IMG/VR virus record: IMGVR_UViG_3300010403_000705
Coordinates: 62,001 to 126,000 of that record
Strand: one strand, 5' to 3'
DNA length: 64,000 bases
Shown here piece after piece: positions 6,450 through 43,477 of the stretch (the first letter of the stretch is position 1; the number at the start of each line of letters is the position of its first letter). The notes beneath the pieces were generated by a model. That model made no database searches. It was not told the DNA's origin and worked only from the letters and a program-made list of their open reading frames with translations. A program made the translations under genes and the position numbers.

Positions 6450-7907
6450 ATGATTAAAGTTGCCGGCAAACCGTCTTCAGATCCTATTCAAGAAAAACTG
6501 AGACAAAGCAAAAAAATTTGGAATAAGCAAGTCTCAGAATTTGCTGATGATCTTTTTCGTATCAAAGATACTATGAATGGTAAGCCTTCTAAATTTCATC
6601 CGGAAAAATCTTCAATTAAAGATCCTATTCCTGGAGATCCTGTAACTATTATTGGAGTTTTGGTAAGTGATTTTCAAGATATAGCTCAAAAAGGAAATGA
6701 TATTATAAGACAACAACTTGAATATTCTAAGACAAGAAAAAGGAAACAACCTAAACAGTCTTTAGCGCCAATGCCAACATCACCTAATAATAGTCCCTCT
6801 ACAATAGATCTGAGTAAGCAATTAACAGCAACAGCAGATATGTATCAGTTGATCGCTCTAGGATCAAATCCATTAACTAGATTTTTTGCTCGTTTACTTA
6901 ATCCATCTTTTGGAACCAGCCATAAAGCAAGGACTAGAAAATACAGAATGTCTTTGTTAAAATCTGCTGTAGAGATATTTAAAGATTTAGTCGATTTGGA
7001 AGCATTTATAGTAAAATCCTCTCCAGAAAGCATTTTTAATGCCAGCAAACTTCTTTCGAAAATAGAAGGTAACTGGAATTTTTTTAAGACTGGATTAAAT
7101 ACTTATAAAGAGACAATGACACAAGATATAGTTAATACAACTCCTATTGAAGATAAACTTAATGTGCGGACTGTTCCAAATGATAATATTACAATTACAG
7201 AGCCATCTAATAGTTACTCTTCATCACAGATAAATTCTATAATAGAAGATTATAAAAAATACAGTAACAATTTTACAGATATTAATTTAAAAAATCTTTT
7301 TTCTTTAATAGGAAAATTCTTAAGTGTTCCTATCGAGAATAAAAATAAAAAATCTTTGATAAGTTCCGAATTACAAAGTGAATATAATAAAGTATTAAGT
7401 ATTCTGAATATTAAATATAATACTAATGGTTCATCATTTAAAGAAGTTTGGGAAACTAAACAAGCGAAGGCGCAATTTCATACTGATCAATTAGAAGCGG
7501 TAGCAGATCGTTCAATCGAAAGATGGTTAGGTAAAATTAAACATCAGTTAGGTCCATCGAATAAAACATCTGCTTATAGGCTAGATATTTATAAGGCTGC
7601 TAATAAAGCTAGAGACTTAATAGATAAGATTATGGATTCTTTAGAAAAGGAAATGAATACTTCCCAGTTAGAAGGACTTGCTAATCAAATAACTGCTGAG
7701 TTTAAAATTATGGAAAGATTGATAAGGGAATTAGAATCCACTTTACGTGGTAAGAATTTTGATAAGTCTTTCATGGACCTCTTAGAAAGTGGTAAAATAA
7801 CTAATTTTGACCCTGAGTTAACTTCTGAGCAGCGGGGCAACCTTCAAAAAATGATTGAAAGAAGAAGGGTAAGAGAACTAACGGATTTTTACCAAAATAG
7901 GAAATAA
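6450..7907 (+). CDS. hypothetical helical protein, possible virion/internal head protein
   Basis: 485 aa; starts MIKVAG (K-x-A); internally repeated helical modules. Confidence 0.6.
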   Translation: MIKVAGKPSSDPIQEKLRQSKKIWNKQVSEFADDLFRIKDTMNGKPSKFHPEKSSIKDPIPGDPVTIIGVLVSDFQDIAQKGNDIIRQQLEYSKTRKRKQPKQSLAPMPTSPNNSPSTIDLSKQLTATADMYQLIALGSNPLTRFFARLLNPSFGTSHKARTRKYRMSLLKSAVEIFKDLVDLEAFIVKSSPESIFNASKLLSKIEGNWNFFKTGLNTYKETMTQDIVNTTPIEDKLNVRTVPNDNITITEPSNSYSSSQINSIIEDYKKYSNNFTDINLKNLFSLIGKFLSVPIENKNKKSLISSELQSEYNKVLSILNIKYNTNGSSFKEVWETKQAKAQFHTDQLEAVADRSIERWLGKIKHQLGPSNKTSAYRLDIYKAANKARDLIDKIMDSLEKEMNTSQLEGLANQITAEFKIMERLIRELESTLRGKNFDKSFMDLLESGKITNFDPELTSEQRGNLQKMIERRRVRELTDFYQNRK

Positions 7908-11076: not shown

Positions 11077-11104
11077 TTGAAATACTGAAAAATGATGTTA
11101 TCTT
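11077..11104 (+). promoter_or_regulatory. candidate sigma70-type promoter upstream of topA
   Basis: TTGAAA-N16-TATCTT with extended -10 TG; the same ATGTTATCTTA 11-mer occurs at 24939-24949, upstream of ORF 24974. Confidence 0.4.
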
Positions 11105-11160
11105 AGAATAGATAGAATAAAATAATTTATATTTTTGCTTGATAAATTTTGGGAATAACC

Positions 11161-24895: not shown

Positions 24896-24973
24896 AATAG
24901 TATCGTTATTTTGACATTTAATAAAATGATAACAAATCATGTTATCTTAAAATAATTGAATGTGTAATACAAA

Positions 24974-28059: not shown

Positions 28060-29307
28060 ATGGAGATAAATGTAAAAGAATTAGAGCCATGTAAGTTAAG
28101 CATTCAGTACATCGCGGATGCCGGAGAAATTCTTGAAAAACGTGCGCAAATTTTACAAGTCTTTAAGAAAGCTCCTGTTCCTGGATTTAGACCAGGGAAA
28201 GGAACTTTAGATGCAATTAAGATTCATTACAAAAATCAAATTGAAGAATCTTTGAAACGCGGTTTAGCAGAAGATGCTTATCATAATACTATTTTTGAGA
28301 AAAAATTAAGACCTCATGGAGCGCCATTTTTTAAGTCTCTGATGATAGCTGATGGAAAATTTACTTGTGATTTTGATTTACATGTTAAACCTGATTTTGA
28401 ATTGGCTCCTTATAAAGAATTAGAAATACCAAAACCTCACGAAGATTTTTCTTCAGTAGAATTCAGTGAGAAAATATTACAAGAATTAAGACGTAAATTT
28501 GGAGATGCTTATCCATATACAGAAAATGATTTTGTGCAAGATAGTGATAATGTAATTATTGATTATCAAGGTACTGTGGACGGTGTAAAAATAGATAATT
28601 TGTCGGCACAGGGAGAAATGCTAACTGTAGGTCGTAGTCAATTACTAAACTTTGATGATAATTTATTAGGCATGGTTTTAGGAGAGACAAGAGAATTTGA
28701 TGTTAAAGTGCCAGAGAATGGTTTACCATCTTTAGCTGGTAAACTAGTTCATTTTAAAGTTACTCTTAATATGGGTTCTAAAACTGAATTATGCGCACTT
28801 GATGACTCCTTAGCTGTAAAAATGGGAAAAAAAGATTTCTCCGAACTAAAAGAATTTGTACATGCAGCTGCTATGAGCAGAACTTCTAACAGTTCCAAAC
28901 TAGCATTAAATGAAGCCATAACAAACAGATTAGTGAATGATAACAAATTTGCGGTTCCCAATTGGTTGAGCTTATCTGAAGCGCGTTATTTAGCACATAA
29001 CTCAAAGATGGATTGGGAAACTATGAATGATGTCGATAAAGAAAAATATTTGCAAATGGCGGAAAGTAATGTTAAATTATCTCTAATTTTAGATAGAATT
29101 AGAGATTTAGAGCCAGAAGCACAAATAACTGATCAAGAAGTTTTCGATATTGTTAAACAAAATTTAACTAAAATGAATAATCAAAAATCTATTGATGATA
29201 CTATAAAAGAAATGAATAGAACTGGCTATCTGCAAATTCTATTTTCTAGAATTAAAGATGAGTTTGTGTTAGATTTTATAACCAAAAGCGTTAAAGTAAT
29301 TGAATAA
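28060..29307 (+). CDS. tig: trigger factor
   Basis: Ribosome-binding PGFRPGK, FKBP-like DNVIIDYQGTVDG...F..NLLGM..GETREF...LAGK.V.F.V, C-terminal SurA-like helices. Confidence 0.92.
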   Translation: MEINVKELEPCKLSIQYIADAGEILEKRAQILQVFKKAPVPGFRPGKGTLDAIKIHYKNQIEESLKRGLAEDAYHNTIFEKKLRPHGAPFFKSLMIADGKFTCDFDLHVKPDFELAPYKELEIPKPHEDFSSVEFSEKILQELRRKFGDAYPYTENDFVQDSDNVIIDYQGTVDGVKIDNLSAQGEMLTVGRSQLLNFDDNLLGMVLGETREFDVKVPENGLPSLAGKLVHFKVTLNMGSKTELCALDDSLAVKMGKKDFSELKEFVHAAAMSRTSNSSKLALNEAITNRLVNDNKFAVPNWLSLSEARYLAHNSKMDWETMNDVDKEKYLQMAESNVKLSLILDRIRDLEPEAQITDQEVFDIVKQNLTKMNNQKSIDDTIKEMNRTGYLQILFSRIKDEFVLDFITKSVKVIE

Positions 29308-29940: not shown

Positions 29941-30606
29941 ATGGTTAATAATGGTGCTGGATCTATTGAAGACATCAGAAAAAAAGTCACTTATACACAT
30001 GAGTTAATATCTACTGCTTATCATGAGGCTGGACATACAATATATGGTTTACTGCATTGTATGAAAGTTAATATGGTACATATTTTTGAAAATAAAAAAT
30101 CAAAAAGAGTATGTGGTTTTACCCATTTTAATTATCCTGTAGCCAGTGACGTAGATGATCCGGAATTATCTCAAAAATTAATGAAGGCTGAAATTTGTCT
30201 TAATTACGCAGGTTTAGCTGCTGAAAAATATCATTTTAAGAATGTTTCAGGATCTGATAGATTTCCAGGATATTGGAAAAATGGATCGTCTAGCGATACT
30301 ATGGCTGCGGCTGCTTTAATAAAACAATATGATTTAGTCCCTCCAGGAAAGAAAAGACATTTTTTTAAAAATAAATTAATTAAAGAAACTGAGAAACAAT
30401 TACAACAACATTGGGATGTTGTTGTAATTGTTTCTCATGCTTTATTCCGAAAAAAAAGATTATATTTTTCTGATTTAAAAAGTTTATTAACGAAGAAATC
30501 TGCAAATAAAGAATTTTGGAAAGAGCAATTTAAGCGTATTGATTATATTTTTAAAAATGGATATGACCTTGACGAGAAAAATTTAAAATTTATATTGATG
30601 CAATGA
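29941..30606 (+). CDS. stand-alone M41 (FtsH protease domain-like) metallopeptidase
   Basis: TAYHEAGH, GFT, YAGLAAE, GSSSD, LQQHWDVV..VSHAL. Confidence 0.8.
   Translation: MVNNGAGSIEDIRKKVTYTHELISTAYHEAGHTIYGLLHCMKVNMVHIFENKKSKRVCGFTHFNYPVASDVDDPELSQKLMKAEICLNYAGLAAEKYHFKNVSGSDRFPGYWKNGSSSDTMAAAALIKQYDLVPPGKKRHFFKNKLIKETEKQLQQHWDVVVIVSHALFRKKRLYFSDLKSLLTKKSANKEFWKEQFKRIDYIFKNGYDLDEKNLKFILMQ
30569..30596 (+). promoter_or_regulatory. candidate sigma70 promoter
   Basis: TTGACG-N16-TATATT, followed by TGATATAT at 30604-30611. Confidence 0.4.
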
Positions 30607-31546: not shown

Positions 31547-34500
31547 ATGTTTATGATAGAGTTTGTGTCTTTGCATAATCAAACGTATTTTTCTATTTTA
31601 GATTCTTTAATTTCTCCTAAAGATCTCTTTTTAAGAGCAAAAGAGTTAGGACAATCTGCTATAGCAATAACGGATCATGGTACTTTGGCATCAGCATGGG
31701 ATGCATTAAAAGCTTCTAAAGAAACTGGTGTCAAATTAATTATTGGGTGTGAATGTTATTTTCAAAATGATTCTCAAAACACTGAAGATAAATTTAGACA
31801 TATTGTACTTATAGCCAAAAACGCCATTGGATATAGAAATTTACTAACGATAAATAAGAAAGGTTTTGACCAAGGGGTTTTTCTAGGTAAAAGAGTCTAT
31901 TCTGTAGTAGATTGGAAACTGTTGAAACAATATTCTGATGGATTGATCTGTTTAACTGCTTGCGGTAACGGTATTGTTTCTCAGCTTCTAACAAATGGTA
32001 AATTTGAAGAGGCTGAAGAAACATTGTTGAAATTGAAAGATATTTTTGGTTCTAATTTAGGAATTGAAATTCAGCCCAATAACATGGATCGTGGCTCTAA
32101 TTTTTATAGTGATAAAATAGACCAAAAATTTTTAAATCGCAGACTAATAGATTTAGGAAAAAAATATGACATCAAGATTGTAGCTGCATGTAACGCACAC
32201 TATTTGAAAAAAGAAGATCATGCAATGCATGATATATTTCTAGCCATTGGCTCTCATCAGCCAGTCTATTCTAATTTTAGATTAAAATATACAGTACCTG
32301 AATTTTATCTCAAATCTGGAGAAGAGATTAAGAATTTTTTCTCTAGGAATTTTGGAGAAGAATTTGCTGAACAGATTTGTAAAAATAGTATATATTTTTC
32401 CTCTTTATGTGAGTATCCTGATTGGATAGATCCTAAATTTTCTAATCCTTCTGGAAAAGAGTTACCAATTTTTCCAGTAAAAGATGAAAAAGATTATTTA
32501 GATTTTTGTCAATGGGTGTCATGTCAGCCAGAGGAAATAAGAAAATTAGAAGAAGATAAATTATTTCTTCGTTATAGATGTTTGATAAAATTTAACTCAA
32601 AAGTAAAAAATATTAATAATGAACAACGTATTCTGTATGACAGCCGTATAGCCGAAGAGTTAGATGTATTGGAATACCATGGATTTTCTAGCTATATGTT
32701 AATTGTGGCTGATTATATTGATTGGGCAAGAAATAATAATATTGCGGTAGGAGAGGGTCGTGGTTCGGTAGGTGGATCTTTGATTGCATATTTATTAGGT
32801 ATTCATCAAGCAGATCCAATTAAATATAATTTAATTTTTGCTAGATTTCATAATAAGGAGAAATCTAGTTTTCCAGATATTGATACTGATTTTGCTCCAT
32901 CTGGACGCGCTTTAGTACAAGAGTATTTAAAGAAAAAGTATGGAGAAGATAATGTGGCACATGTTTCTAATGTAAATACTATCACTCCAAAAGTTTATGT
33001 AAGAGATATCGCTAGAGCTTGCGAATTAGGTGGCTCACGTGAAGATGCGATCAAAATTGGAAATGATGTAGCAGACTGTATTCCGGCTGATATTCATTCT
33101 ATTGAGGATGCTTTGGTGAAGGTGCCTTTGTTTGCAGAATATTGTAAAAAATATTCTGAGTTTGTCAAATACAAAGATATTTGCGGAAAATACCGAGCAT
33201 GGTCTACTCATGCTGGTGGTATTATTATTTCTGCTAGACCTTTAACCGGACTAGTACCATTAAGAAAAGATAAAGATGGAGCTTTAGCTATTGAATATGA
33301 TAAAGATAAAGCTGAAGAAAATGGTCTCGTAAAAATGGATACTTTAGGATTATCTACTTTAGATATTATTGGTCAAACTATTAAATTAATTAAAGAATCT
33401 GGGAAACCATTACCTCCTGAACCGCTTAATTATGAGGAATATGATAAATCAACTTATGATTTAGTATCTGAAGGAGATACATTTTGTGTATTTCAGTTAG
33501 GTACTAGTGGCGGGACCATTGATCTATGCCGTAGAATTAAACCAAAATCAGTTAATGATATTAGTTATGTTAATTCTTTAGCTAGACCATCTGCGCGAGA
33601 TATGCGCACGGATTTTATTGCTACCAAAGATGGTAAAAAGCCATTCTCATTATTGCATCCTAATTTAGGAAGAGCTTTTAATAACACATACGGATTTGGT
33701 CTATATGAAGAATCCTTGATGTATTTAGCACAAGATGTCGCTGGTTGGAGTTTGCATTCTGCAGATCGTCTACGTAAATTAACCAAAGAAAAAGGTAAAA
33801 ATCCTAAAAAAGCACAGCAATGGAGAAATGAATTCATTAATGATGCAACAAAAAATTCGATAGATGAAGAAATAGCAAAAAAAATCTGGGATGAAGTAGT
33901 AGATAAATTTCAAGGTTACGGTTTTAATATGTCACATAGCATATTGTATTCTATGACCAGTTATAAAACTGCTTATTTAAAAGCCCATTACCCAGTAGAA
34001 TTTTTGATGGCTAACTTAATGGCAGAGGTAAAATCTAATACCCCGGATGCCAAAGCAAATATCGAAAAAATAAAGAAAGAGTTAAGGGAGCACAAAGTCA
34101 AGTTAATGCCGCCAGATATTAATAATTCTCAACTAAGTTATACTATTTCTAAAGATAATAAGTTATTAACTGGATTGGATGCCTTGAAATTCGTAGGCGA
34201 AGATGCTATAAAAGATATAATTGAAAAAAGACCTTTTAAAAGTTTTTTTGATTTTATGGTTAGAGTTGATTCAAGAAAAGTGCGAGCAAATGCAATACAA
34301 GCTTTGGCTGCTGCAGGTAGTATGGATATTTTTGGTATCCCCAGAAAATTAGTGTACTTATATTGTTCTGATTACAGAAAAAAATTACAGGTTTGGTTAA
34401 AAAAGCATGATGTTTCCAAAGAAGAATTCATATACCCTTGGCCACAAGAATTGGAATGGAAAATACATGAATTATATGCTTTAGAACAATATTATTTAGG

Positions 34501-35074
34501 AGAATCATTTGTTTGTAAACCAGCAGATGCATATGGTAAATTTTTTAAAGAAGACCATAAAACTATTAATGATATTAAACGATCTAAAGATAGGACTAAA
34601 ATATTTCCTATTAAAGCTATAGTAAGGAGCTTTTTTGAATTTAAAGTTAAAAAAGAAACTAGTAAATATTATGGCCAATCCATGATAAAAGCCATAATTG
34701 AGGATATGAATGGAGAACAGTGTTCTTGTACTATTTTTCCAGATAGATGGAAGACGATACAAAACCGATTAAAAGAAGTACATAGTAAAGCGGTATTTGA
34801 CACTGGTTTAGCTCTTAGTTTTGCTGGAAATACAAATAACTATGAAGATGACATTGGTATAATCTTAGAAGACTTATTCAATGTGGCTCTCATTCCATCA
34901 TTGCCAAATGATCTAAAAGCTAAAAAAATTAATTTAAAAGAATTAAAGGCAAAAATTGTAAAAGAAGAAAATAGTATATCTTCCAATAAAGATTCTCTAT
35001 TAGAAGAAATTGAGGACTCCCTTATAAATGATGGCTTGTTAGATTTGGATGTGGAATTTGAAAATGATGATTAA
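31547..35074 (+). CDS. dnaE: DNA polymerase III alpha subunit (family C)
   Basis: PHP domain (AITDHG), GRGSVGGSL, FPDIDTDF, HAGG, KMDTLGL, YGFNMSHS, AYLKAHYP, OB fold. Confidence 0.97.
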   Translation: MFMIEFVSLHNQTYFSILDSLISPKDLFLRAKELGQSAIAITDHGTLASAWDALKASKETGVKLIIGCECYFQNDSQNTEDKFRHIVLIAKNAIGYRNLLTINKKGFDQGVFLGKRVYSVVDWKLLKQYSDGLICLTACGNGIVSQLLTNGKFEEAEETLLKLKDIFGSNLGIEIQPNNMDRGSNFYSDKIDQKFLNRRLIDLGKKYDIKIVAACNAHYLKKEDHAMHDIFLAIGSHQPVYSNFRLKYTVPEFYLKSGEEIKNFFSRNFGEEFAEQICKNSIYFSSLCEYPDWIDPKFSNPSGKELPIFPVKDEKDYLDFCQWVSCQPEEIRKLEEDKLFLRYRCLIKFNSKVKNINNEQRILYDSRIAEELDVLEYHGFSSYMLIVADYIDWARNNNIAVGEGRGSVGGSLIAYLLGIHQADPIKYNLIFARFHNKEKSSFPDIDTDFAPSGRALVQEYLKKKYGEDNVAHVSNVNTITPKVYVRDIARACELGGSREDAIKIGNDVADCIPADIHSIEDALVKVPLFAEYCKKYSEFVKYKDICGKYRAWSTHAGGIIISARPLTGLVPLRKDKDGALAIEYDKDKAEENGLVKMDTLGLSTLDIIGQTIKLIKESGKPLPPEPLNYEEYDKSTYDLVSEGDTFCVFQLGTSGGTIDLCRRIKPKSVNDISYVNSLARPSARDMRTDFIATKDGKKPFSLLHPNLGRAFNNTYGFGLYEESLMYLAQDVAGWSLHSADRLRKLTKEKGKNPKKAQQWRNEFINDATKNSIDEEIAKKIWDEVVDKFQGYGFNMSHSILYSMTSYKTAYLKAHYPVEFLMANLMAEVKSNTPDAKANIEKIKKELREHKVKLMPPDINNSQLSYTISKDNKLLTGLDALKFVGEDAIKDIIEKRPFKSFFDFMVRVDSRKVRANAIQALAAAGSMDIFGIPRKLVYLYCSDYRKKLQVWLKKHDVSKEEFIYPWPQELEWKIHELYALEQYYLGESFVCKPADAYGKFFKEDHKTINDIKRSKDRTKIFPIKAIVRSFFEFKVKKETSKYYGQSMIKAIIEDMNGEQCSCTIFPDRWKTIQNRLKEVHSKAVFDTGLALSFAGNTNNYEDDIGIILEDLFNVALIPSLPNDLKAKKINLKELKAKIVKEENSISSNKDSLLEEIEDSLINDGLLDLDVEFENDD

Positions 35075-35104: not shown

Positions 35105-35138
35105 AAGAGCGCTCGGTTCACCAGAACCGAGCGCTCTT
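35105..35138 (+). terminator. intrinsic terminator after dnaE
   Basis: AAGAGCGCTCGGTTC / ACCA / GAACCGAGCGCTCTT followed by TCTTT. Confidence 0.85.
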
Positions 35139-35151
35139 TCTTTATGAGACA

Positions 35152-35185
35152 ATTGAGAGGTTTTATTTAAATAAAACCTCTCAAT
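35152..35185. repeat. perfect 34-bp palindrome without spacer
   Basis: ATTGAGAGGTTTTATTT|AAATAAAACCTCTCAAT. Confidence 0.95.
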
Positions 35186-35290
35186 GATATATAAGATATT
35201 AATCAATAATAAAAAACAATATAAAAAGTAGTAAATAAGAAAAATGATATAAATGATATTATATGTATATGCATAACAAGGAATAAGATT

Positions 35291-36163
35291 ATGAAACTTT
35301 CAGATTGGGCAAAAAAACAGGGTATCTCTTATTTAACTGCTTATAGGTGGTTTAAGGATGGTAGATTACCTATTAAGGCGTATCAATCTGATTCGGGCAC
35401 TATAATAGTGCAAGATGAATCTGAAAACTTGGAGAATCCTATGTTGGGTTGTATGACTAGTAATCAATCAAATGATATCATGTCTCTTTTTTTAAAAAAA
35501 ACTGTAGAGTTTAGTAAAAATAATGCTACAGTTGAAGATTTTGCAGCTTACATATTATCTAATTTCTCTCTTAAATTGAACAATTCAGTGGACCATCCTA
35601 GATATTCAAGGAATAAGCCTAAATCTGAAGAAATTCAAAAGCATTTTCAACAATTTTTAAAACCTAAAGGCGAAAAGCCTAAACCTAATATGTTGATTAC
35701 TGATGGAGAAACATTTGATAAATTAGCAGAACAATCTGACACATTAGCTAGTCAAGAACTTGAAGAGCAACTTGGTAAATTATCAGATAATTTACCAAGT
35801 GTAAGTATAGTTCCAGAAGTACAGGATTTATTGAAAGATTTCACCGCTGTTTTTGCTGCCAGCCCAAGTAATAGTTTAAATTTTAACAGCTCTATTAAAT
35901 CTTATAACAGTACGAATGCCGAAGGAATTATTAATCGAAATGAACTAACTCCACAAACAACTAACTATACCGATTCAATTAATAATGCCTCCGGCAGCTC
36001 GTCAAATATTTTTAATACACAATCTGTATTAACACCCTCATCTGTTACAGTAACTGGGGCTTTTAAACCAACTCAAAAAGAATTAGAGTCAGTTGGTAAA
36101 ACAATGGAACAAGTATTAGTTAAATCTAAAAGAGGAAGAAAAACTTCCAAAATTAAAAAATAA
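35291..36163 (+). CDS. protein with IS607-TnpA/MerR-like N-terminal HTH and unrelated, partly disordered C-terminus
   Basis: MKLSDWAKKQGISYLTAYRWFKDGRLP...SGTIIV; no serine-recombinase YARVS motif. Confidence 0.75.
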   Translation: MKLSDWAKKQGISYLTAYRWFKDGRLPIKAYQSDSGTIIVQDESENLENPMLGCMTSNQSNDIMSLFLKKTVEFSKNNATVEDFAAYILSNFSLKLNNSVDHPRYSRNKPKSEEIQKHFQQFLKPKGEKPKPNMLITDGETFDKLAEQSDTLASQELEEQLGKLSDNLPSVSIVPEVQDLLKDFTAVFAASPSNSLNFNSSIKSYNSTNAEGIINRNELTPQTTNYTDSINNASGSSSNIFNTQSVLTPSSVTVTGAFKPTQKELESVGKTMEQVLVKSKRGRKTSKIKK

Positions 36164-36176
36164 ACTTGGAGATTTT

Positions 36177-36821
36177 ATGAATGAAAATTTAGAAGATGTA
36201 ACAATTTCGGTTGATGATAATGGTTTTGCCGAATTAACTAAAGTATATGAAAATACTGATGCGAAGATAGAAGAGAATTCTCAGGCAACAATCTCTTCCC
36301 ATGAAGATATTAATAAAATTGAAGAATATCCAACAATAATAAATGATTTACCCTCAGAAGAAGTAATATATGTACTATGTCCCAAAGAATTTCAAAATTT
36401 CAATGATGAAATGAAAGAAAAAAAATTAGCTATTAATAAAAATCATTTAAATGAAAATTCTCAAGCACATTTTAAAAAGTTTATCAAAGCAGAAGGAGGT
36501 AAATCAGATTATACTTTTTCAAGAGCTGGTTTAGGAGGTACAATGAGTACAGGTCGCACTCATAAATCTAGCGTAACCAATATTTTATGTGAGAAGGAGG
36601 CGGCAATAAAATGCAAGGAAGCTATTGATAATATCAATAAAATCTCTCAAAAAATTTTGCAAGAGTTTGAGTATAGTATGTCGCATACACCAGTAGAGAA
36701 AAATTTAAGCGATAAATTATCAGCTGCTCTAGACACTTTTAAAGAGAAAGCGGTAAGTGCTAAAAGAAATATTTTCTTCTCTATAGTTAATCGTGCACAA
36801 AAAATGTTAAATATTAAATAA
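36177..36821 (+). CDS. hypothetical protein
   Basis: 214 aa ORF, GGAG RBS. Confidence 0.6.
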   Translation: MNENLEDVTISVDDNGFAELTKVYENTDAKIEENSQATISSHEDINKIEEYPTIINDLPSEEVIYVLCPKEFQNFNDEMKEKKLAINKNHLNENSQAHFKKFIKAEGGKSDYTFSRAGLGGTMSTGRTHKSSVTNILCEKEAAIKCKEAIDNINKISQKILQEFEYSMSHTPVEKNLSDKLSAALDTFKEKAVSAKRNIFFSIVNRAQKMLNIK

Positions 36822-41972: not shown

Positions 41973-42536
41973 ATGAAAACGGTGCTTGGTTTTGATGTAT
42001 CTAGTTCCACAATTGGCTGGTGTGTTTTAGAAATTAGTGATGAGAGTATTATAAAATATACTGATTCTGGATATTTTAAGCCCGTTAAAAAAGGATCTAT
42101 AATTGATCGCTTGGTCGATACTAGAAAAAAAATACAAGATATTATCTATAAATATAAACCAGATTATATTGGTATTGAAGATTTAATAAAATTTATGCCT
42201 AAGAGCACTGCTACAACTGTAGTAATGTTAACAACTTTTAATCGTATGGTATGTCTAACTTCTTATGATTATTTAACTAGTAATCCAGGTTTATTTAATG
42301 TTATGAGTATTAGGCACGGATTAAAAATCTCTAAAATAATTCCAAAAAAAGAAGATATGCCAGAACTTGTGTCTAAACATCTAGGAATTATTTTTCCCTA
42401 TGAGAGAGTATTAAAAGGCAAGAAAAATGGTACAATAAAAATAGAAAATTATGATAGGGCAGATGGCATGGCAGTGGCTTTATATTATGCATTTTTGTTA
42501 ACGGGAAAAATTAAGCACAAGGGCAAGAATAAATGA
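41973..42536 (+). CDS. ruvC: RuvC-like Holliday junction resolvase
   Basis: VLGFDVSSSTIGW, KPDYIGIED, DRADGMAVA. Confidence 0.85.
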   Translation: MKTVLGFDVSSSTIGWCVLEISDESIIKYTDSGYFKPVKKGSIIDRLVDTRKKIQDIIYKYKPDYIGIEDLIKFMPKSTATTVVMLTTFNRMVCLTSYDYLTSNPGLFNVMSIRHGLKISKIIPKKEDMPELVSKHLGIIFPYERVLKGKKNGTIKIENYDRADGMAVALYYAFLLTGKIKHKGKNK

Positions 42537-43477
42537 ATCTATCAGAAGCGTATTCAATTTTAGAATTATCACCCAATTCTTCAGCGGATGAAGTTAAAAA
42601 AAAGTACAGAGAATTTACAAAAAAATATCATCCAGATATTAATAAAGAAGAAAATTCTGAGGATAGGTTTAAGAAAATTAATGAGGCTTATAACTGTATA
42701 AATAATGGGAAAAATTCGGACGCTGATTCATTTACTGGTTTTCATAACCCTTTTGTGAATAAGACTACCTTCCAAGCTGAAAATATCCAACTATATACGA
42801 CAATTTCTTTTAAAGAATCTGTTTTAGGGTGTCAAAAAGAACTATGTTTTAGTAGGAATAGTAAATGCACGAATTGTAATGGTAATGGTTTTATTCGTAT
42901 AAATAATGGATGTGATAGATGTCATGGCAAAGGACAAATTGTTGGTAAACAAGGTAACATGATATTTACACGAACATGTGATAAATGTATGGGACAGAAC
43001 AATTCTTCTCAGTGTAATATATGTTTAGGCACAGGACATGTAAATATGCAGGTGTCAATTAATGTAAATATTCCTGGAGGTGTTGTCAGTGGTAATATTT
43101 TAAGACTAAGTGGTTTCGGAAACTATATAGGTAGTTTTATAAATATGGACCAATATACTGAAGCACACCTACATATAACAGTGATTATGGATGAAGGTTT
43201 AACTTTAGAAAATAATGACGTTATATCCAGGATAAATATTACTTTATTGGAGGCGTTACAAGGATCGCAAAAAACTGTAAAAACTATTCTTGGAGATTAC
43301 ATAATCTCCATACCCCCTTTATCTAAAAACAAAGAAGAAATTAACATACCAAATTTAGGTGTTAATGGAATGGGTAATCAAAAAGTTATATTAGATGTAT
43401 CATATCCATCTAATATACAAGATGTAATTAATGTGTTATCTAATGATGAGGAGTTATTTCCGTGCCATTCTCAATGA
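42533..43477 (+). CDS. dnaJ: DnaJ (Hsp40) chaperone
   Basis: J domain with HPD, CxxCxGxG repeats, C-terminal substrate-binding domain. Confidence 0.92.
   Translation: MNLSEAYSILELSPNSSADEVKKKYREFTKKYHPDINKEENSEDRFKKINEAYNCINNGKNSDADSFTGFHNPFVNKTTFQAENIQLYTTISFKESVLGCQKELCFSRNSKCTNCNGNGFIRINNGCDRCHGKGQIVGKQGNMIFTRTCDKCMGQNNSSQCNICLGTGHVNMQVSINVNIPGGVVSGNILRLSGFGNYIGSFINMDQYTEAHLHITVIMDEGLTLENNDVISRINITLLEALQGSQKTVKTILGDYIISIPPLSKNKEEINIPNLGVNGMGNQKVILDVSYPSNIQDVINVLSNDEELFPCHSQ

What the first reader, a model, noticed from the sequence alone, without database searches (positions are those of the whole stretch)
35291..36163. IS607 transposase DNA-binding domain apparently domesticated on a new protein
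Seen: the first ~42 aa (MKLSDWAKKQGISYLTAYRWFKDGRLPIKAYQSDSGTIIV) look like the N-terminal HTH of IS607 TnpA. No serine-recombinase catalytic motif follows and there is no neighbouring TnpB; the rest is an unrelated helical segment, a Ser/Thr/Asn-rich region and a basic KRGRK tail. Upstream are 9-bp-phased repeats: AAATGATAT x2 at 35242-35259, and CAATGATAT/ATAAGATAT at 35182-35199. Established: the IS607 TnpA HTH binds short direct repeats near element ends. Inference: a transposon-derived regulator or origin-binding protein that recognises TGATAT motifs.
Basis: partly seen in the sequence, partly recalled or inferred. Interest (0 to 1): 0.6.

Follow-up and report, generated by a model that had tools for sequence, protein, structure and literature searches.

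The report
Megaphage regulator built from IS607 transposase
A soil megaphage gene right after its DNA polymerase has kept the DNA-binding head of an IS607 transposase, lost the cutting domain, gained an AT-hook tail, and sits behind two conserved, helically phased pairs of TGATAT repeats that it most likely binds to control its own operon.

Summary
ORF 35291-36163 encodes a 290-aa protein. Its first ~45 residues are an IS607-TnpA winged helix: 24 of the first 25 residues match a complete IS607 tnpA, and the profile match has probability 99.7%. There is no resolvase domain. The 433-kb phage genome holds no tnpB and no second IS607 copy.

The gene is not a relic:
- The profile search found 170 relatives, at 50% clustering, among 1.84 billion proteins. 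Nearly all share one architecture: HTH, a helix pair, a disordered stretch and a C-terminal AT-hook.
- dN/dS is 0.01-0.12 in the folded parts.
- dnaE lies directly upstream in 43 of 44 loci.

The upstream repeats are real. Within this window alone they are only marginally beyond chance. Their weight comes from comparison:
- Two TGATAT-N3-WGATA sites are conserved across relatives.
- The motif is about 260 times denser there than in the rest of the same loci, and it is almost unique in the genome.
- The two sites lie 50-51 or 59-61 bp apart, never between, with at least 4 independent switches.
- Site 2 overlaps an extended -10-like element.

Best reading: an autoregulating, cooperatively binding transcription factor derived from a transposase. 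Origin binding is not excluded. DNA binding itself is untested.

The parts
35291..36163 (+). Gene for the 290-aa protein P0001 (stop codon included). It is the first gene after the dnaE terminator and heads a tightly packed run of + strand genes that leads to recA.
   Evidence: ORF list and translation. 569 full-length homologues. Conserved gene order.
35291..35419 (+). Residues 1-43: IS607-TnpA-type (MerR-like) winged helix-turn-helix with topology b-a-a-b-b.
   Evidence: AF2 pLDDT 94-97. Foldseek's best matches are BldC, RacA, Xis and MerR proteins. hhalign against the IS607 TnpA alignment gives 99.7%. The positions invariant in the family (K2 L3 G11 Y14 T16 R19 W20 F21) are also invariant in IS607 TnpAs. 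dN/dS 0.01-0.10.
35462..35695 (+). Residues 58-135: family-specific conserved helical module (LKKTVEFSKNN..EDFAAYILSNF, then PKYSRNKPK..QKHFQQFLKPKGEKPKP).
   Evidence: Alignments A1 and A4. AF2 places helices at residues 59-76, 81-91 and 112-123 with pLDDT up to 95. No Pfam, PDB or Atlas match; best structural Z is 4.6. dN/dS 0.02-0.12.
35696..36058 (+). Residues 136-256: a long predicted helix followed by a variable, Ser/Thr/Asn-rich, predicted-disordered linker. It holds short conserved motifs (PE..DL.KDL and EGVV.R.VDLTPQ..NYTGS).
   Evidence: pLDDT below 50 for residues 191-256. Length and sequence vary across the family. dN/dS 0.15-0.9.
36059..36160 (+). Residues 257-290: conserved FKPTQKE motif plus a basic AT-hook-like tail. 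The tail reads KRGRKTSK here, KRGRKPSK in most relatives and canonical RGRP in some.
   Evidence: F258, P260, G282, R283 and K284 are invariant. Canonical RGRPRK or RGRGRP sits at the same position in L036, L042, L043, P0287 and P0293. KKRGRKP is AT-hook 2 of MeCP2, a weak AT-hook (PMC5028900).
35185..35216 (+). Site 1: two 9-bp-phased direct half-sites (TGATATATA, AGATAT) followed by a conserved A/T block (AATCAATAATAAAA).
   Evidence: Conserved in 27 or more relatives as TGATATATA[ACT]GATAtt + AgatAATAAtAAAAt. In most relatives the TGA is the dnaE stop codon.
35245..35262 (+). Site 2: two 9-bp-phased direct half-sites (TGATATAAA, TGATAT). The second half together with TAT reads TGATATTAT, an extended -10-like element (TGnTAnnAT).
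   Evidence: The A2 and T6 positions of the putative -10 hexamer are kept in nearly all the upstream sequences read (my reading of the alignment). Sigma-70-type promoters with an extended -10 occur elsewhere in the window.
35266..35290 (+). Conserved leader: TATATGCATAAC, then the Shine-Dalgarno AAGGA, then ATG 13 nt after the block. An IS607 tnpA (L048) shares this leader.
   Evidence: L048 carries AATATTAT-N4-TATATGCATAGC-N13-ATG.
35105..35148 (+). Intrinsic terminator of dnaE: a 15-bp G+C-rich stem, a 4-nt loop and a T-rich tail.
35152..35185 (+). Perfect 34-nt palindrome (18-nt overlapping arms) that abuts site 1. Its role is unknown. It is not conserved in relatives.
   Evidence: Relatives carry different hairpins between site 1 and site 2 instead.
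31547..35074 (+). dnaE (DNA polymerase III alpha, 1175 aa), the conserved upstream neighbour.
   Evidence: Pfam PHP, DNA_pol3_alpha, finger and HHH_6 domains. Upstream of the gene in 43 of 44 loci, and also in the most distant relatives.

Best explanation
P0001 is a domesticated IS607 transposase. It keeps the N-terminal TnpA winged-helix DNA-binding domain and the proximal tnpA leader. The serine-recombinase domain is replaced by a family-specific helical module, a disordered linker and a C-terminal AT-hook. It is a conserved single-copy gene of a clade of ~430-480-kb soil megaphages. It always follows dnaE and heads the gene run that leads to recA, ruvC and dnaJ.

Proposed mechanism (inferred):
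- Several copies bind head-to-tail to two pairs of TGATAT direct repeats phased 9 bp apart. This is how IS607 TnpA DNA-binding domains bind tandem motifs about one helical turn apart in a transposon end.
- Site 1 lies at the end of dnaE. Site 2 lies 50 or 60 bp downstream and overlaps an extended -10-like promoter element of the protein's own gene.
- The whole-turn spacing lets the two sites be occupied cooperatively on one face of the DNA, by looping or by a short filament. [quoted passage not shown]
- Occupancy of site 2 would shut off the gene's own promoter, giving negative autoregulation of the gene and probably of the downstream replication-recombination genes.

What is shown: the homology, the architecture, the selective constraint, the gene order, and the conservation, uniqueness and phasing of the motif.
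What is inferred: that this protein is the one that binds, the sign of regulation, and the oligomeric state.
For: Origin of the DNA-binding domain
-. 24 of the first 25 residues are identical to the TnpA of a complete tnpA-tnpB element (L048).
- The same invariant residues are shared with IS607 TnpAs.
- The leader is shared with L048: AATATTAT-N4-TATATGCATA[AG]C-N13-ATG.

Not a transposon
- No resolvase domain.
- No TnpB and no second TnpA in the genome.
- Fixed gene order in 43 of 44 loci.

Functional constraint
- dN/dS 0.01-0.12 in the HTH and central domain.
- One architecture across nearly all 170 representatives found among 1.84 billion proteins.

Cis element
- Conserved blocks sit in an otherwise diverged spacer.
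- Motif density is 2.29 per kb upstream against 0.0087 per kb in the rest of the same loci.
- The strict motif occurs only 3 times in 433 kb, and 2 of those are here.
- The distance between the sites is 50-51 bp in 10 loci and 59-61 bp in 17, never between. The protein tree requires at least 4, and by parsimony 6, independent switches.
- The second half of site 2 reads TGnTAnnAT. The phage elsewhere uses sigma-70-type promoters with an extended -10.

Precedent
- IS1535 TnpA binds tandem motifs about 10 bp apart, cooperatively over about 70 bp of the left end. [quoted passage not shown]

AT-hook
- A canonical RGRP core sits at the same position in divergent members.

Regulatory rather than replicative role
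- A related composite of the TATGCATA block plus the TGATAT tandem precedes a tRNA array in G000 and in G005.
Against: - No binding data and no transcript data exist. The only public run holding this DNA is the source soil metagenome, and there is no RNA run.
- The promoter assignment is a consensus match only.
- TGATAT resembles an extended -10 element, so part of the conservation could reflect RNA polymerase contacts rather than this protein.
- The subclade with a changed recognition helix (RWF to RHF, Y to N; L031, L037-L041, L044) keeps nearly the same DNA motif. No protein-DNA covariation therefore ties the HTH to the sites.
- The window protein has T where relatives have the AT-hook proline.
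- The L048 IS607, whose recognition helix is identical, has no TGATAT upstream. TTATATATT-like repeats do occur near both of its ends, but that is only a lead.
- The homodimer prediction gave no verdict.
Confidence: 0.55

Rival explanations
1. Replication-origin protein. The two repeat pairs plus the conserved A/T block would act as iterons and an unwinding element, and the protein would be the initiator that recruits the replisome next to dnaE.
For: - Direct repeats with helical phasing and an adjacent conserved A/T-rich block, AgatAATAAtAAAAt, resemble iteron origins.
- The gene keeps its position next to dnaE even in the most distant members.
- The motif is nearly unique in the genome, as an origin would be.
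- Iteron-binding initiators commonly repress their own gene as well (general knowledge, not tested here).
Against: - Cumulative GC skew rises monotonically over all 433 kb, with no inflection at 97 kb. This is weak evidence, because nearly all genes share one strand.
- There are only four half-sites.
- Site 2 coincides with a promoter-like element directly before the gene.
- A related composite lies before a tRNA array in two genomes, which suits transcription better.
- No helicase loader or other initiator-type domain was found in the protein.
Confidence: 0.17
2. The conserved upstream blocks are promoter, terminator and leader signals read by RNA polymerase or by another factor. P0001 would bind elsewhere, for example as a general binder of AT-rich DNA through its AT-hook, or at sites not yet seen.
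For: - TGATATTAT fits an extended -10 element.
- No covariation links changes in the recognition helix to changes in the motif.
- Within the window alone the repeat is not beyond chance under an AT-rich null.
Against: - One promoter does not need four half-sites in two 9-bp-phased pairs held a whole number of turns apart.
- The bipartite motif is not used at other promoters of this genome.
- The most conserved part of the protein is a sequence-specific HTH of a type known to bind tandem motifs beside its own gene (PMC6188088).
Confidence: 0.15
3. Anti-transposon decoy. A derivative carrying only the DNA-binding domain would compete with incoming IS607 TnpA for transposon ends and so protect the megaphage genome. 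Truncated transposase inhibitors of other elements work this way.
For: - The DNA-binding domain is almost identical to that of a live IS607 found in a viral contig.
- IS607 elements do invade huge phages (L003 and L048).
- G000 itself carries none.
Against: - Conservation of the gene's own phased sites, of its fixed position after dnaE, and of the helical module and AT-hook is not needed for a decoy.
- No TGATAT motif is seen at the L048 element's ends.
Confidence: 0.05
4. A decaying remnant of an IS607 insertion with no function.
For: The catalytic domain is lost and much of the C-terminal half is low-complexity.
Against: - Intact full-length ORFs in 569 homologues.
- dN/dS 0.01-0.12 in two domains.
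- A conserved C-terminal motif.
- Conserved gene order and conserved cis sites.
Confidence: 0.02

Closest known systems
IS607-family serine transposase TnpA (IS607, IS1535, ISC1926)
   Same: - N-terminal MerR-like winged helix with the same invariant residues.
- Tandem short motifs about one helical turn apart lie just upstream of the gene, in the position of a transposon left end. TnpA binds such motifs cooperatively over about 70 bp (PMC6188088).
- The proximal leader sequence is shared with one IS607 tnpA.
   Different: - No serine-recombinase domain and no nucleophile motif.
- No tnpB.
- Single copy at a fixed place in the genome.
- Extra helical module, disordered linker and AT-hook.
- Under purifying selection as a phage gene.
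BldC of Streptomyces, and Xis / recombination directionality factors (Pukovnik Xis, RdfS)
   Same: - Same small MerR/excisionase-type winged-helix fold. Foldseek against BldC: probability 0.96, target TM 0.62.
- According to the literature (recalled, not checked here) these proteins bind direct repeats head-to-tail and oligomerise on DNA. That is the mode proposed here.
   Different: - Those proteins are single-domain and 50-80 aa long.
- The Foldseek E-value is only 0.19.
- There is no sequence-level relationship as close as the one to IS607 TnpA.
- No integrase partner was seen among the genes examined beside this one.
MerR-family transcription factors
   Same: The fold of the DNA-binding domain. 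A role at a promoter.
   Different: - No Pfam MerR hit.
- No long dimerisation coiled coil directly after the wing, and no effector domain.
- The sites are direct repeats, not a palindrome inside an over-long promoter spacer.
Regulators derived from a transposase DNA-binding domain (Tn5 Inh, IS1 InsA, IS911 OrfA, P-element KP repressor; from memory)
   Same: A transposase DNA-binding domain without catalysis that binds the element's own sequences and represses.
   Different: Those are still encoded by the mobile element and control its transposition. This protein is a fixed phage gene with new C-terminal modules.
AT-hook proteins (HMGA; MeCP2 AT-hook 2, KKRGRKP)
   Same: An RGR core in a basic tail (PMC5028900). 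The canonical RGRP core is present in some family members.
   Different: The window protein reads RGRKT. The RGRKP form binds AT-rich DNA only weakly in MeCP2. There is a single copy, at the extreme C-terminus.

Membership tests
IS607-family transposase (TnpA) | N-terminal MerR-like winged-helix DNA-binding domain homologous to TnpA | tested here: met
   NF033518 is the only NCBIfam hit, in 26 of 38 members. BLASTP 2e-21 against L048 TnpA. hhalign probability 99.7%.
IS607-family transposase (TnpA) | Serine-recombinase catalytic domain (PF00239) with the Y-x-R-V-S nucleophile motif | tested here: not met
   No Resolvase hit at E<=10. 0 of 48 members hit at E<=1. hhalign of the central domain against the TnpA catalytic domain gives probability 0.9%. 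The region aligned to the motif is variable and gapped in the family. The model is all-helical.
IS607-family transposase (TnpA) | Part of a mobile unit: adjacent tnpB, variable location or multiple copies | tested here: not met
   No TnpB (PF07282) and no second TnpA in G000. Fixed position after dnaE in 43 of 44 loci.
IS607-family transposase (TnpA) | Binds tandem motifs about 10 bp apart next to its own gene | tested here: inconclusive
   Suitable conserved, phased motifs exist. Binding itself cannot be tested with these tools.
MerR-family regulator | MerR HTH followed by a dimerisation coiled coil and an effector-binding region; palindromic operator in a 19-20-bp promoter spacer | tested here: not met
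   No Pfam MerR or MerR_1 hit. The sites are direct repeats. Only the fold of the first 45 residues resembles MerR proteins.
Xis / RDF / BldC-type small winged-helix proteins | Single-domain protein of about 50-80 aa with this fold | tested here: not met
   The fold match is weak (E 0.19, probability 0.96). The protein is 290 aa with further conserved modules.
AT-hook | Core R-G-R-P in a basic context | tested here: inconclusive
   RGRKT in the window protein, RGRKP in most relatives, RGRP or RGRGRP in L036, L042, L043, P0287 and P0293. Minor-groove binding is not testable here.
Iteron-type replication initiator | Binds repeated sites at an origin that shows replication-associated signals | tested here: inconclusive
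   Repeats and an A/T block are present. There is no GC-skew inflection at the locus. Origin activity is not testable here.

The most novel reading that the evidence does not exclude
An IS607 left end and the DNA-binding head of its transposase were domesticated together and now form the replication origin and initiator of a whole clade of megaphages, or else a TnpA-like nucleoprotein filament that couples the end of dnaE transcription to the start of the recombination operon. A transposon-end complex would then have been turned into a core replication or expression switch.
Probability: 0.15. Interest if true: 0.8.

Novelty: new variant of a known kind. Interest (0 to 1): 0.58.

Why it matters
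Domesticated transposase DNA-binding domains are well documented in eukaryotes. To my knowledge they are rarely shown in phages, and my paper searches found no described case for IS607.

Here the protein head and part of its own leader DNA appear to have been kept together. The predicted operator has a clear, testable architecture: 2 x 2 half-sites, with spacing that changes only in whole helical turns.

The family has no Pfam or NCBIfam family for the whole protein. In PHROGs only the first 45 residues hit, weakly, a transposase family. No source gives the protein a meaningful name. It is nevertheless a fixed member of the replication-recombination block of uncultivated ~450-kb soil phages, for which I found no regulator described.

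It gives an entry point for studying megaphage gene control in vitro without the phage. It also offers a natural experiment on how the IS607 DNA-binding domain recognises tandem motifs.

Tried and rejected
- Degraded resolvase. Tested by profile-profile comparison of the central domain alone against the IS607 catalytic domain (probability 0.9%) and by scanning 48 members against Pfam. Not supported. When the whole proteins are aligned the match runs on past the HTH, but that extension is carried by the HTH score. Two faint colinear resemblances remain and have no statistical weight: KKTVEF..VED against the start of the catalytic domain, and DL.KDL against a conserved TnpA stretch that I take, from memory of the TnpA structures, to be the helix E region.\n- General phage promoter motif. 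Rejected. The bipartite motif is essentially confined to this locus, and other promoter-like sites in the window look different.\n- Fold of the central domain. Foldseek against PDB, VIA-align wide (best Z 4.6), ESM Atlas by shape and by features, and PDB sequence and profile searches gave nothing meaningful.\n- Homodimer of the central domain with complex prediction: no verdict. This is evidence neither for nor against.\n- Expression. The only public run with this DNA is the source soil metagenome and there is no RNA run.\n- Origin by GC skew: no inflection.\n- PADLOC: no hit for the protein.\n- Names from public sources: none.\n- Downstream neighbours (214, 283, 100 and 169 aa): no informative family or PDB match.\n- Covariation between recognition helix and motif: looked for by eye in the RHF subclade and not seen.\n- Operators' notes. 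No alternative genetic code was used.
Full report
**Setting**

The window is bases 62,001-126,000 of a 432,844-bp IMG/VR virus record with about 30% G+C and CheckV completeness 97%. Nearly all genes lie on the + strand. The only public run that holds this DNA is a soil metagenome. Around the finding lie a PD-(D/E)XK nuclease, trigger factor, an M41-like peptidase, dnaE (31547-35074), the gene in question (35291-36163), four small genes of unknown function, recA, ruvC and dnaJ. This is therefore a megaphage, not a bacterium, and the dnaE is the phage's own.

**The observation**

The repeat finder joins the repeats into one 19-nt unit that occurs twice, 60 nt apart, with 17 of 19 bases identical. 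Between dnaE and the repeats lie a strong intrinsic terminator (35105-35138 plus a T tail) and a perfect 34-nt palindrome. Within this window alone the repeat is only marginally unusual. It turns up in 2 of 400 shuffles under the composition of the whole spacer, but in 70 of 400 under the composition of its AT-rich part.

**The N-terminal domain is an IS607 TnpA DNA-binding domain**

- Pfam finds nothing. The only NCBIfam family hit is IS607 transposase (E 9e-4 on residues 1-60), and 26 of 38 family members hit it. PHROGs gives a transposase family for residues 1-45.
- tblastn finds 62% identity over 45 residues to an annotated IS607 TnpA of Thermus phage YS40.
- The viral-contig scan returned true IS607 TnpAs (L048-L055, also L003), with the HTH followed by the Y-x-R-V-S motif and a Pfam Resolvase domain.
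- L048 is a complete tnpA-tnpB unit; its second ORF carries the Cas12f1-like TNB domain. Against this TnpA, P0001 scores 2e-21, and 24 of the first 25 residues are identical.
- Profile against profile, the probability is 99.7%.
- The positions invariant in the new family (K2, L3, G11, Y14, T16, R19, W20, F21) are also invariant in the TnpAs.
- AlphaFold2 (AF2) models residues 1-42 as a b-a-a-b-b winged helix with pLDDT 94-97. The nearest solved folds are BldC, RacA, Xis and MerR proteins.

**The rest is not a resolvase**

- No Resolvase hit appears at E<=10, and none in 48 members at E<=1.
- The central domain alone against the TnpA catalytic domain alone gives hhalign probability 0.9%.
- The segment that would align with the nucleophile motif is variable and gapped in the family.
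- The model is all-helical.
- The genome holds no TnpB and no other TnpA.

**A real, constrained family with one architecture**

The word search found 569 full-length homologues on contigs of up to 480 kb. The exhaustive profile search with the central domain found only 170 representatives among 1.84 billion proteins. In nearly all of them the domain starts at residue 42-60, directly after an HTH-sized head. The few exceptions are hits that begin at residue 1-10, which are probably fragments, and one chimeric-looking protein, P0279.

Of the eleven divergent hits whose sequences were read, ten keep the HTH and the helix pair LKKTVEFS..EDFAAY; the eleventh is P0279. Most of them also keep a C-terminal basic motif. 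That motif is KRGRKPSK in most proteins. It is a canonical AT-hook (RGRPRK, RGRGRP) in L036, L042, L043, P0287 and P0293. KKRGRKP is AT-hook 2 of MeCP2, which binds AT-rich DNA only weakly (PMC5028900).

dN/dS by region:

| Region | dN/dS |
|---|---|
| HTH | 0.01-0.10 |
| Central module | 0.02-0.12 |
| C-terminal tail | 0.09-0.23 |
| Linker | 0.15-0.9 |

dnaE lies directly upstream in 43 of 44 loci; the exception is cut off by a contig end. The 283-, 100- and 169-aa genes and recA lie downstream in 42-44 of 44 loci. The most distant members also follow dnaE.

No fold or family was found for the central module.

**The cis element**

In relatives with 37-64% protein identity, the dnaE-to-gene spacer keeps two blocks, while the sequence between them is free to change.

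- Site 1 reads TGATATATA[ACT]GATAtt and is followed by AgatAATAAtAAAAt. In most loci its TGA is the dnaE stop codon. Where an HNH endonuclease ORF has been inserted, as in L039, the TGA serves as the stop of that ORF instead.
- Site 2 reads AAAATGATATAnaTGATAttATtTGTATAt. The block (AATC)TATGCATAAc, a Shine-Dalgarno sequence and the ATG follow.

Numbers:
- The bipartite pattern is 2.29 per kb in the 400 nt upstream and 0.0087 per kb in the rest of the same loci, on both strands.
- In G000 the strict pattern occurs three times, two of them here, against 1.35 expected.
- The exact 14-mer pattern has four hits in G000. Relatives have about as few hits as the control pattern.
- The distance from site 1 to site 2 is 50-51 bp in 10 loci and 59-61 bp in 17. 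No locus has 52-58 bp.
- On the protein tree the two spacing classes switch at least 4 times, as forced by well-supported branches, and 6 times by parsimony.

Length changes in this spacer are therefore accepted only in units of about one helical turn. This is expected if both sites are occupied together on one face of the DNA.

The second half of site 2 plus the next three bases reads TGnTAnnAT. The A2 and T6 positions of the -10 hexamer are kept in nearly all the upstream sequences I read from the alignment. Other promoter-like sites in the window combine a TTGACA-like -35 with an extended -10.

**The leader is shared with IS607**

The L048 tnpA carries AATATTAT-N4-TATATGCATAGC-N13-ATG. The window carries GATATTAT-N4-TATATGCATAAC-N13-ATG. 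This match was noticed after the fact. My rough estimate of its chance probability, allowing for the eight TnpA loci inspected, is of the order of 1e-4 to 1e-3. It suggests that the 5' part of an IS607 unit, and not only a protein domain, was retained.

**How it probably works**

IS1535 TnpA binds tandem motifs about 10 bp apart and spreads cooperatively over about 70 bp of the left end. [quoted passage not shown] By analogy I propose that P0001 oligomers occupy the four half-sites, which together span about 75-80 bp, with the AT-hook in the neighbouring A/T tract. Because site 2 overlaps the -10-like element, the simplest outcome is negative autoregulation of the gene and of the tightly packed genes behind it. 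Activation from about -27 at a promoter without a -35 element remains possible.

A related composite of the TATGCATA block plus a TGATAT tandem lies in front of a tRNA array in G000 and, immediately before the first tRNA, in G005. In G005 the 13-nt AATCT..GCATA block occurs only at these two places in the genome. This hints at a small regulon and favours a transcriptional role.

**Rivals**

- Origin binding is not excluded. The repeats, the A/T block and the dnaE adjacency fit it. GC skew shows no feature at the locus, and the promoter overlap and the tRNA-leader site fit regulation better.
- The blocks might be read only by RNA polymerase or by another factor. That reading does not explain four half-sites held a whole number of turns apart, or the uniqueness of the motif.
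- An anti-IS607 decoy role and a dead remnant are unlikely given the constraint and the fixed gene order.

**Weak points**

- There are no binding data and no transcript data.
- No covariation links the changed recognition helix of the RHF subclade to its sites.
- The window protein has T in place of the AT-hook proline.
- L048 has no TGATAT upstream. TTATATATT-like repeats near both of its ends are only a lead.
- The homodimer prediction gave no verdict.

**Verdict**

This is an unannotated family: an IS607 TnpA DNA-binding domain, together with its leader, domesticated as a fixed gene of a megaphage clade. Its predicted, helically phased operator is directly testable.

Paper searches found no description of such a protein. 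I rate it a new variant of a known kind, namely a DNA-binding regulator derived from a transposase.

Noticed in passing
L039:4223-4888; also L019, L032, L042, L045, L046 and L081, upstream of the homologous gene: In at least seven relatives another ORF separates dnaE from the gene. In L039 it is 221 aa, carries an HNH-type motif (DHIIP...NLRPLSAKQN) and ends on the TGA of site 1, which is otherwise the dnaE stop. The ends of the ORFs in the other loci carry the same motif. It looks like a homing endonuclease that inserts at one precise spot.
   Followed up: partly
G000:C1:400,942-401,126 (outside the window) and G005:C1:41,157-41,185 (L066, L076): A TGATAT-N3-TGATA tandem plus the block AATCT[AG][TG]GCATAG lies in the leader of a tRNA array. 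In G005 it sits directly before the first tRNA, downstream of a good TTGACG-N17-TGGTATACA promoter. In G005 the 13-nt block occurs only there and upstream of the P0001 homologue. This may be a second target of the protein.
   Followed up: partly
L079:992-4878: In a distant relative, dnaE is split into two pieces by about 1.5 kb that holds a 316-aa ORF (faint ROS_MUCR hit). It could be an intein, an intron or a mobile insertion.
   Followed up: no
G000:C1:250,001-350,000 (outside the window): G+C rises from about 30% to 36-52% over roughly 100 kb of the same record. IMG/VR classes the record as a provirus. This could be a compositional island, host DNA or a chimeric assembly.
   Followed up: no
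window 11095-11105 and 24939-24949: The same 11-mer, ATGTTATCTTA, occurs twice (0.09 expected). Each copy forms an extended -10-like element 17 nt after a TTGAAA or TTGACA hexamer, so these are probably a class of phage promoters.
   Followed up: partly
window 36177-36821: The 214-aa gene directly downstream evolves very fast. It is detectable by tblastn in only 6 of 44 syntenic loci, while its neighbours stay 45-87% identical.
   Followed up: partly
window 28060-29307, 29941-30606 and about 42533-43477: The phage encodes a full trigger factor and an FtsH-like M41 peptidase fragment. Relatives have a DnaJ after ruvC; for the window's own ORF at about 42533-43477 that identity is inferred from position only and was not scanned. 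This is a chaperone and protease set inside the replication block.
   Followed up: no
window 35152-35185: A perfect 34-nt palindrome with an AT-rich centre abuts site 1. It is absent from relatives, which carry various hairpins between the two sites instead.
   Followed up: partly
G000, whole record: GC skew is positive in all but one of the 10-kb bins (230-240 kb is slightly negative), and the cumulative curve has no clear turning point over 433 kb. 534 of 589 called ORFs lie on one strand.
   Followed up: partly
L048:4860-4900 and 6825-6850: The IS607 with the closest HTH has TTATATATT-like repeats near both presumed ends. These could be its TnpA motifs and relatives of the TGATATATA half-site.
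   Followed up: no
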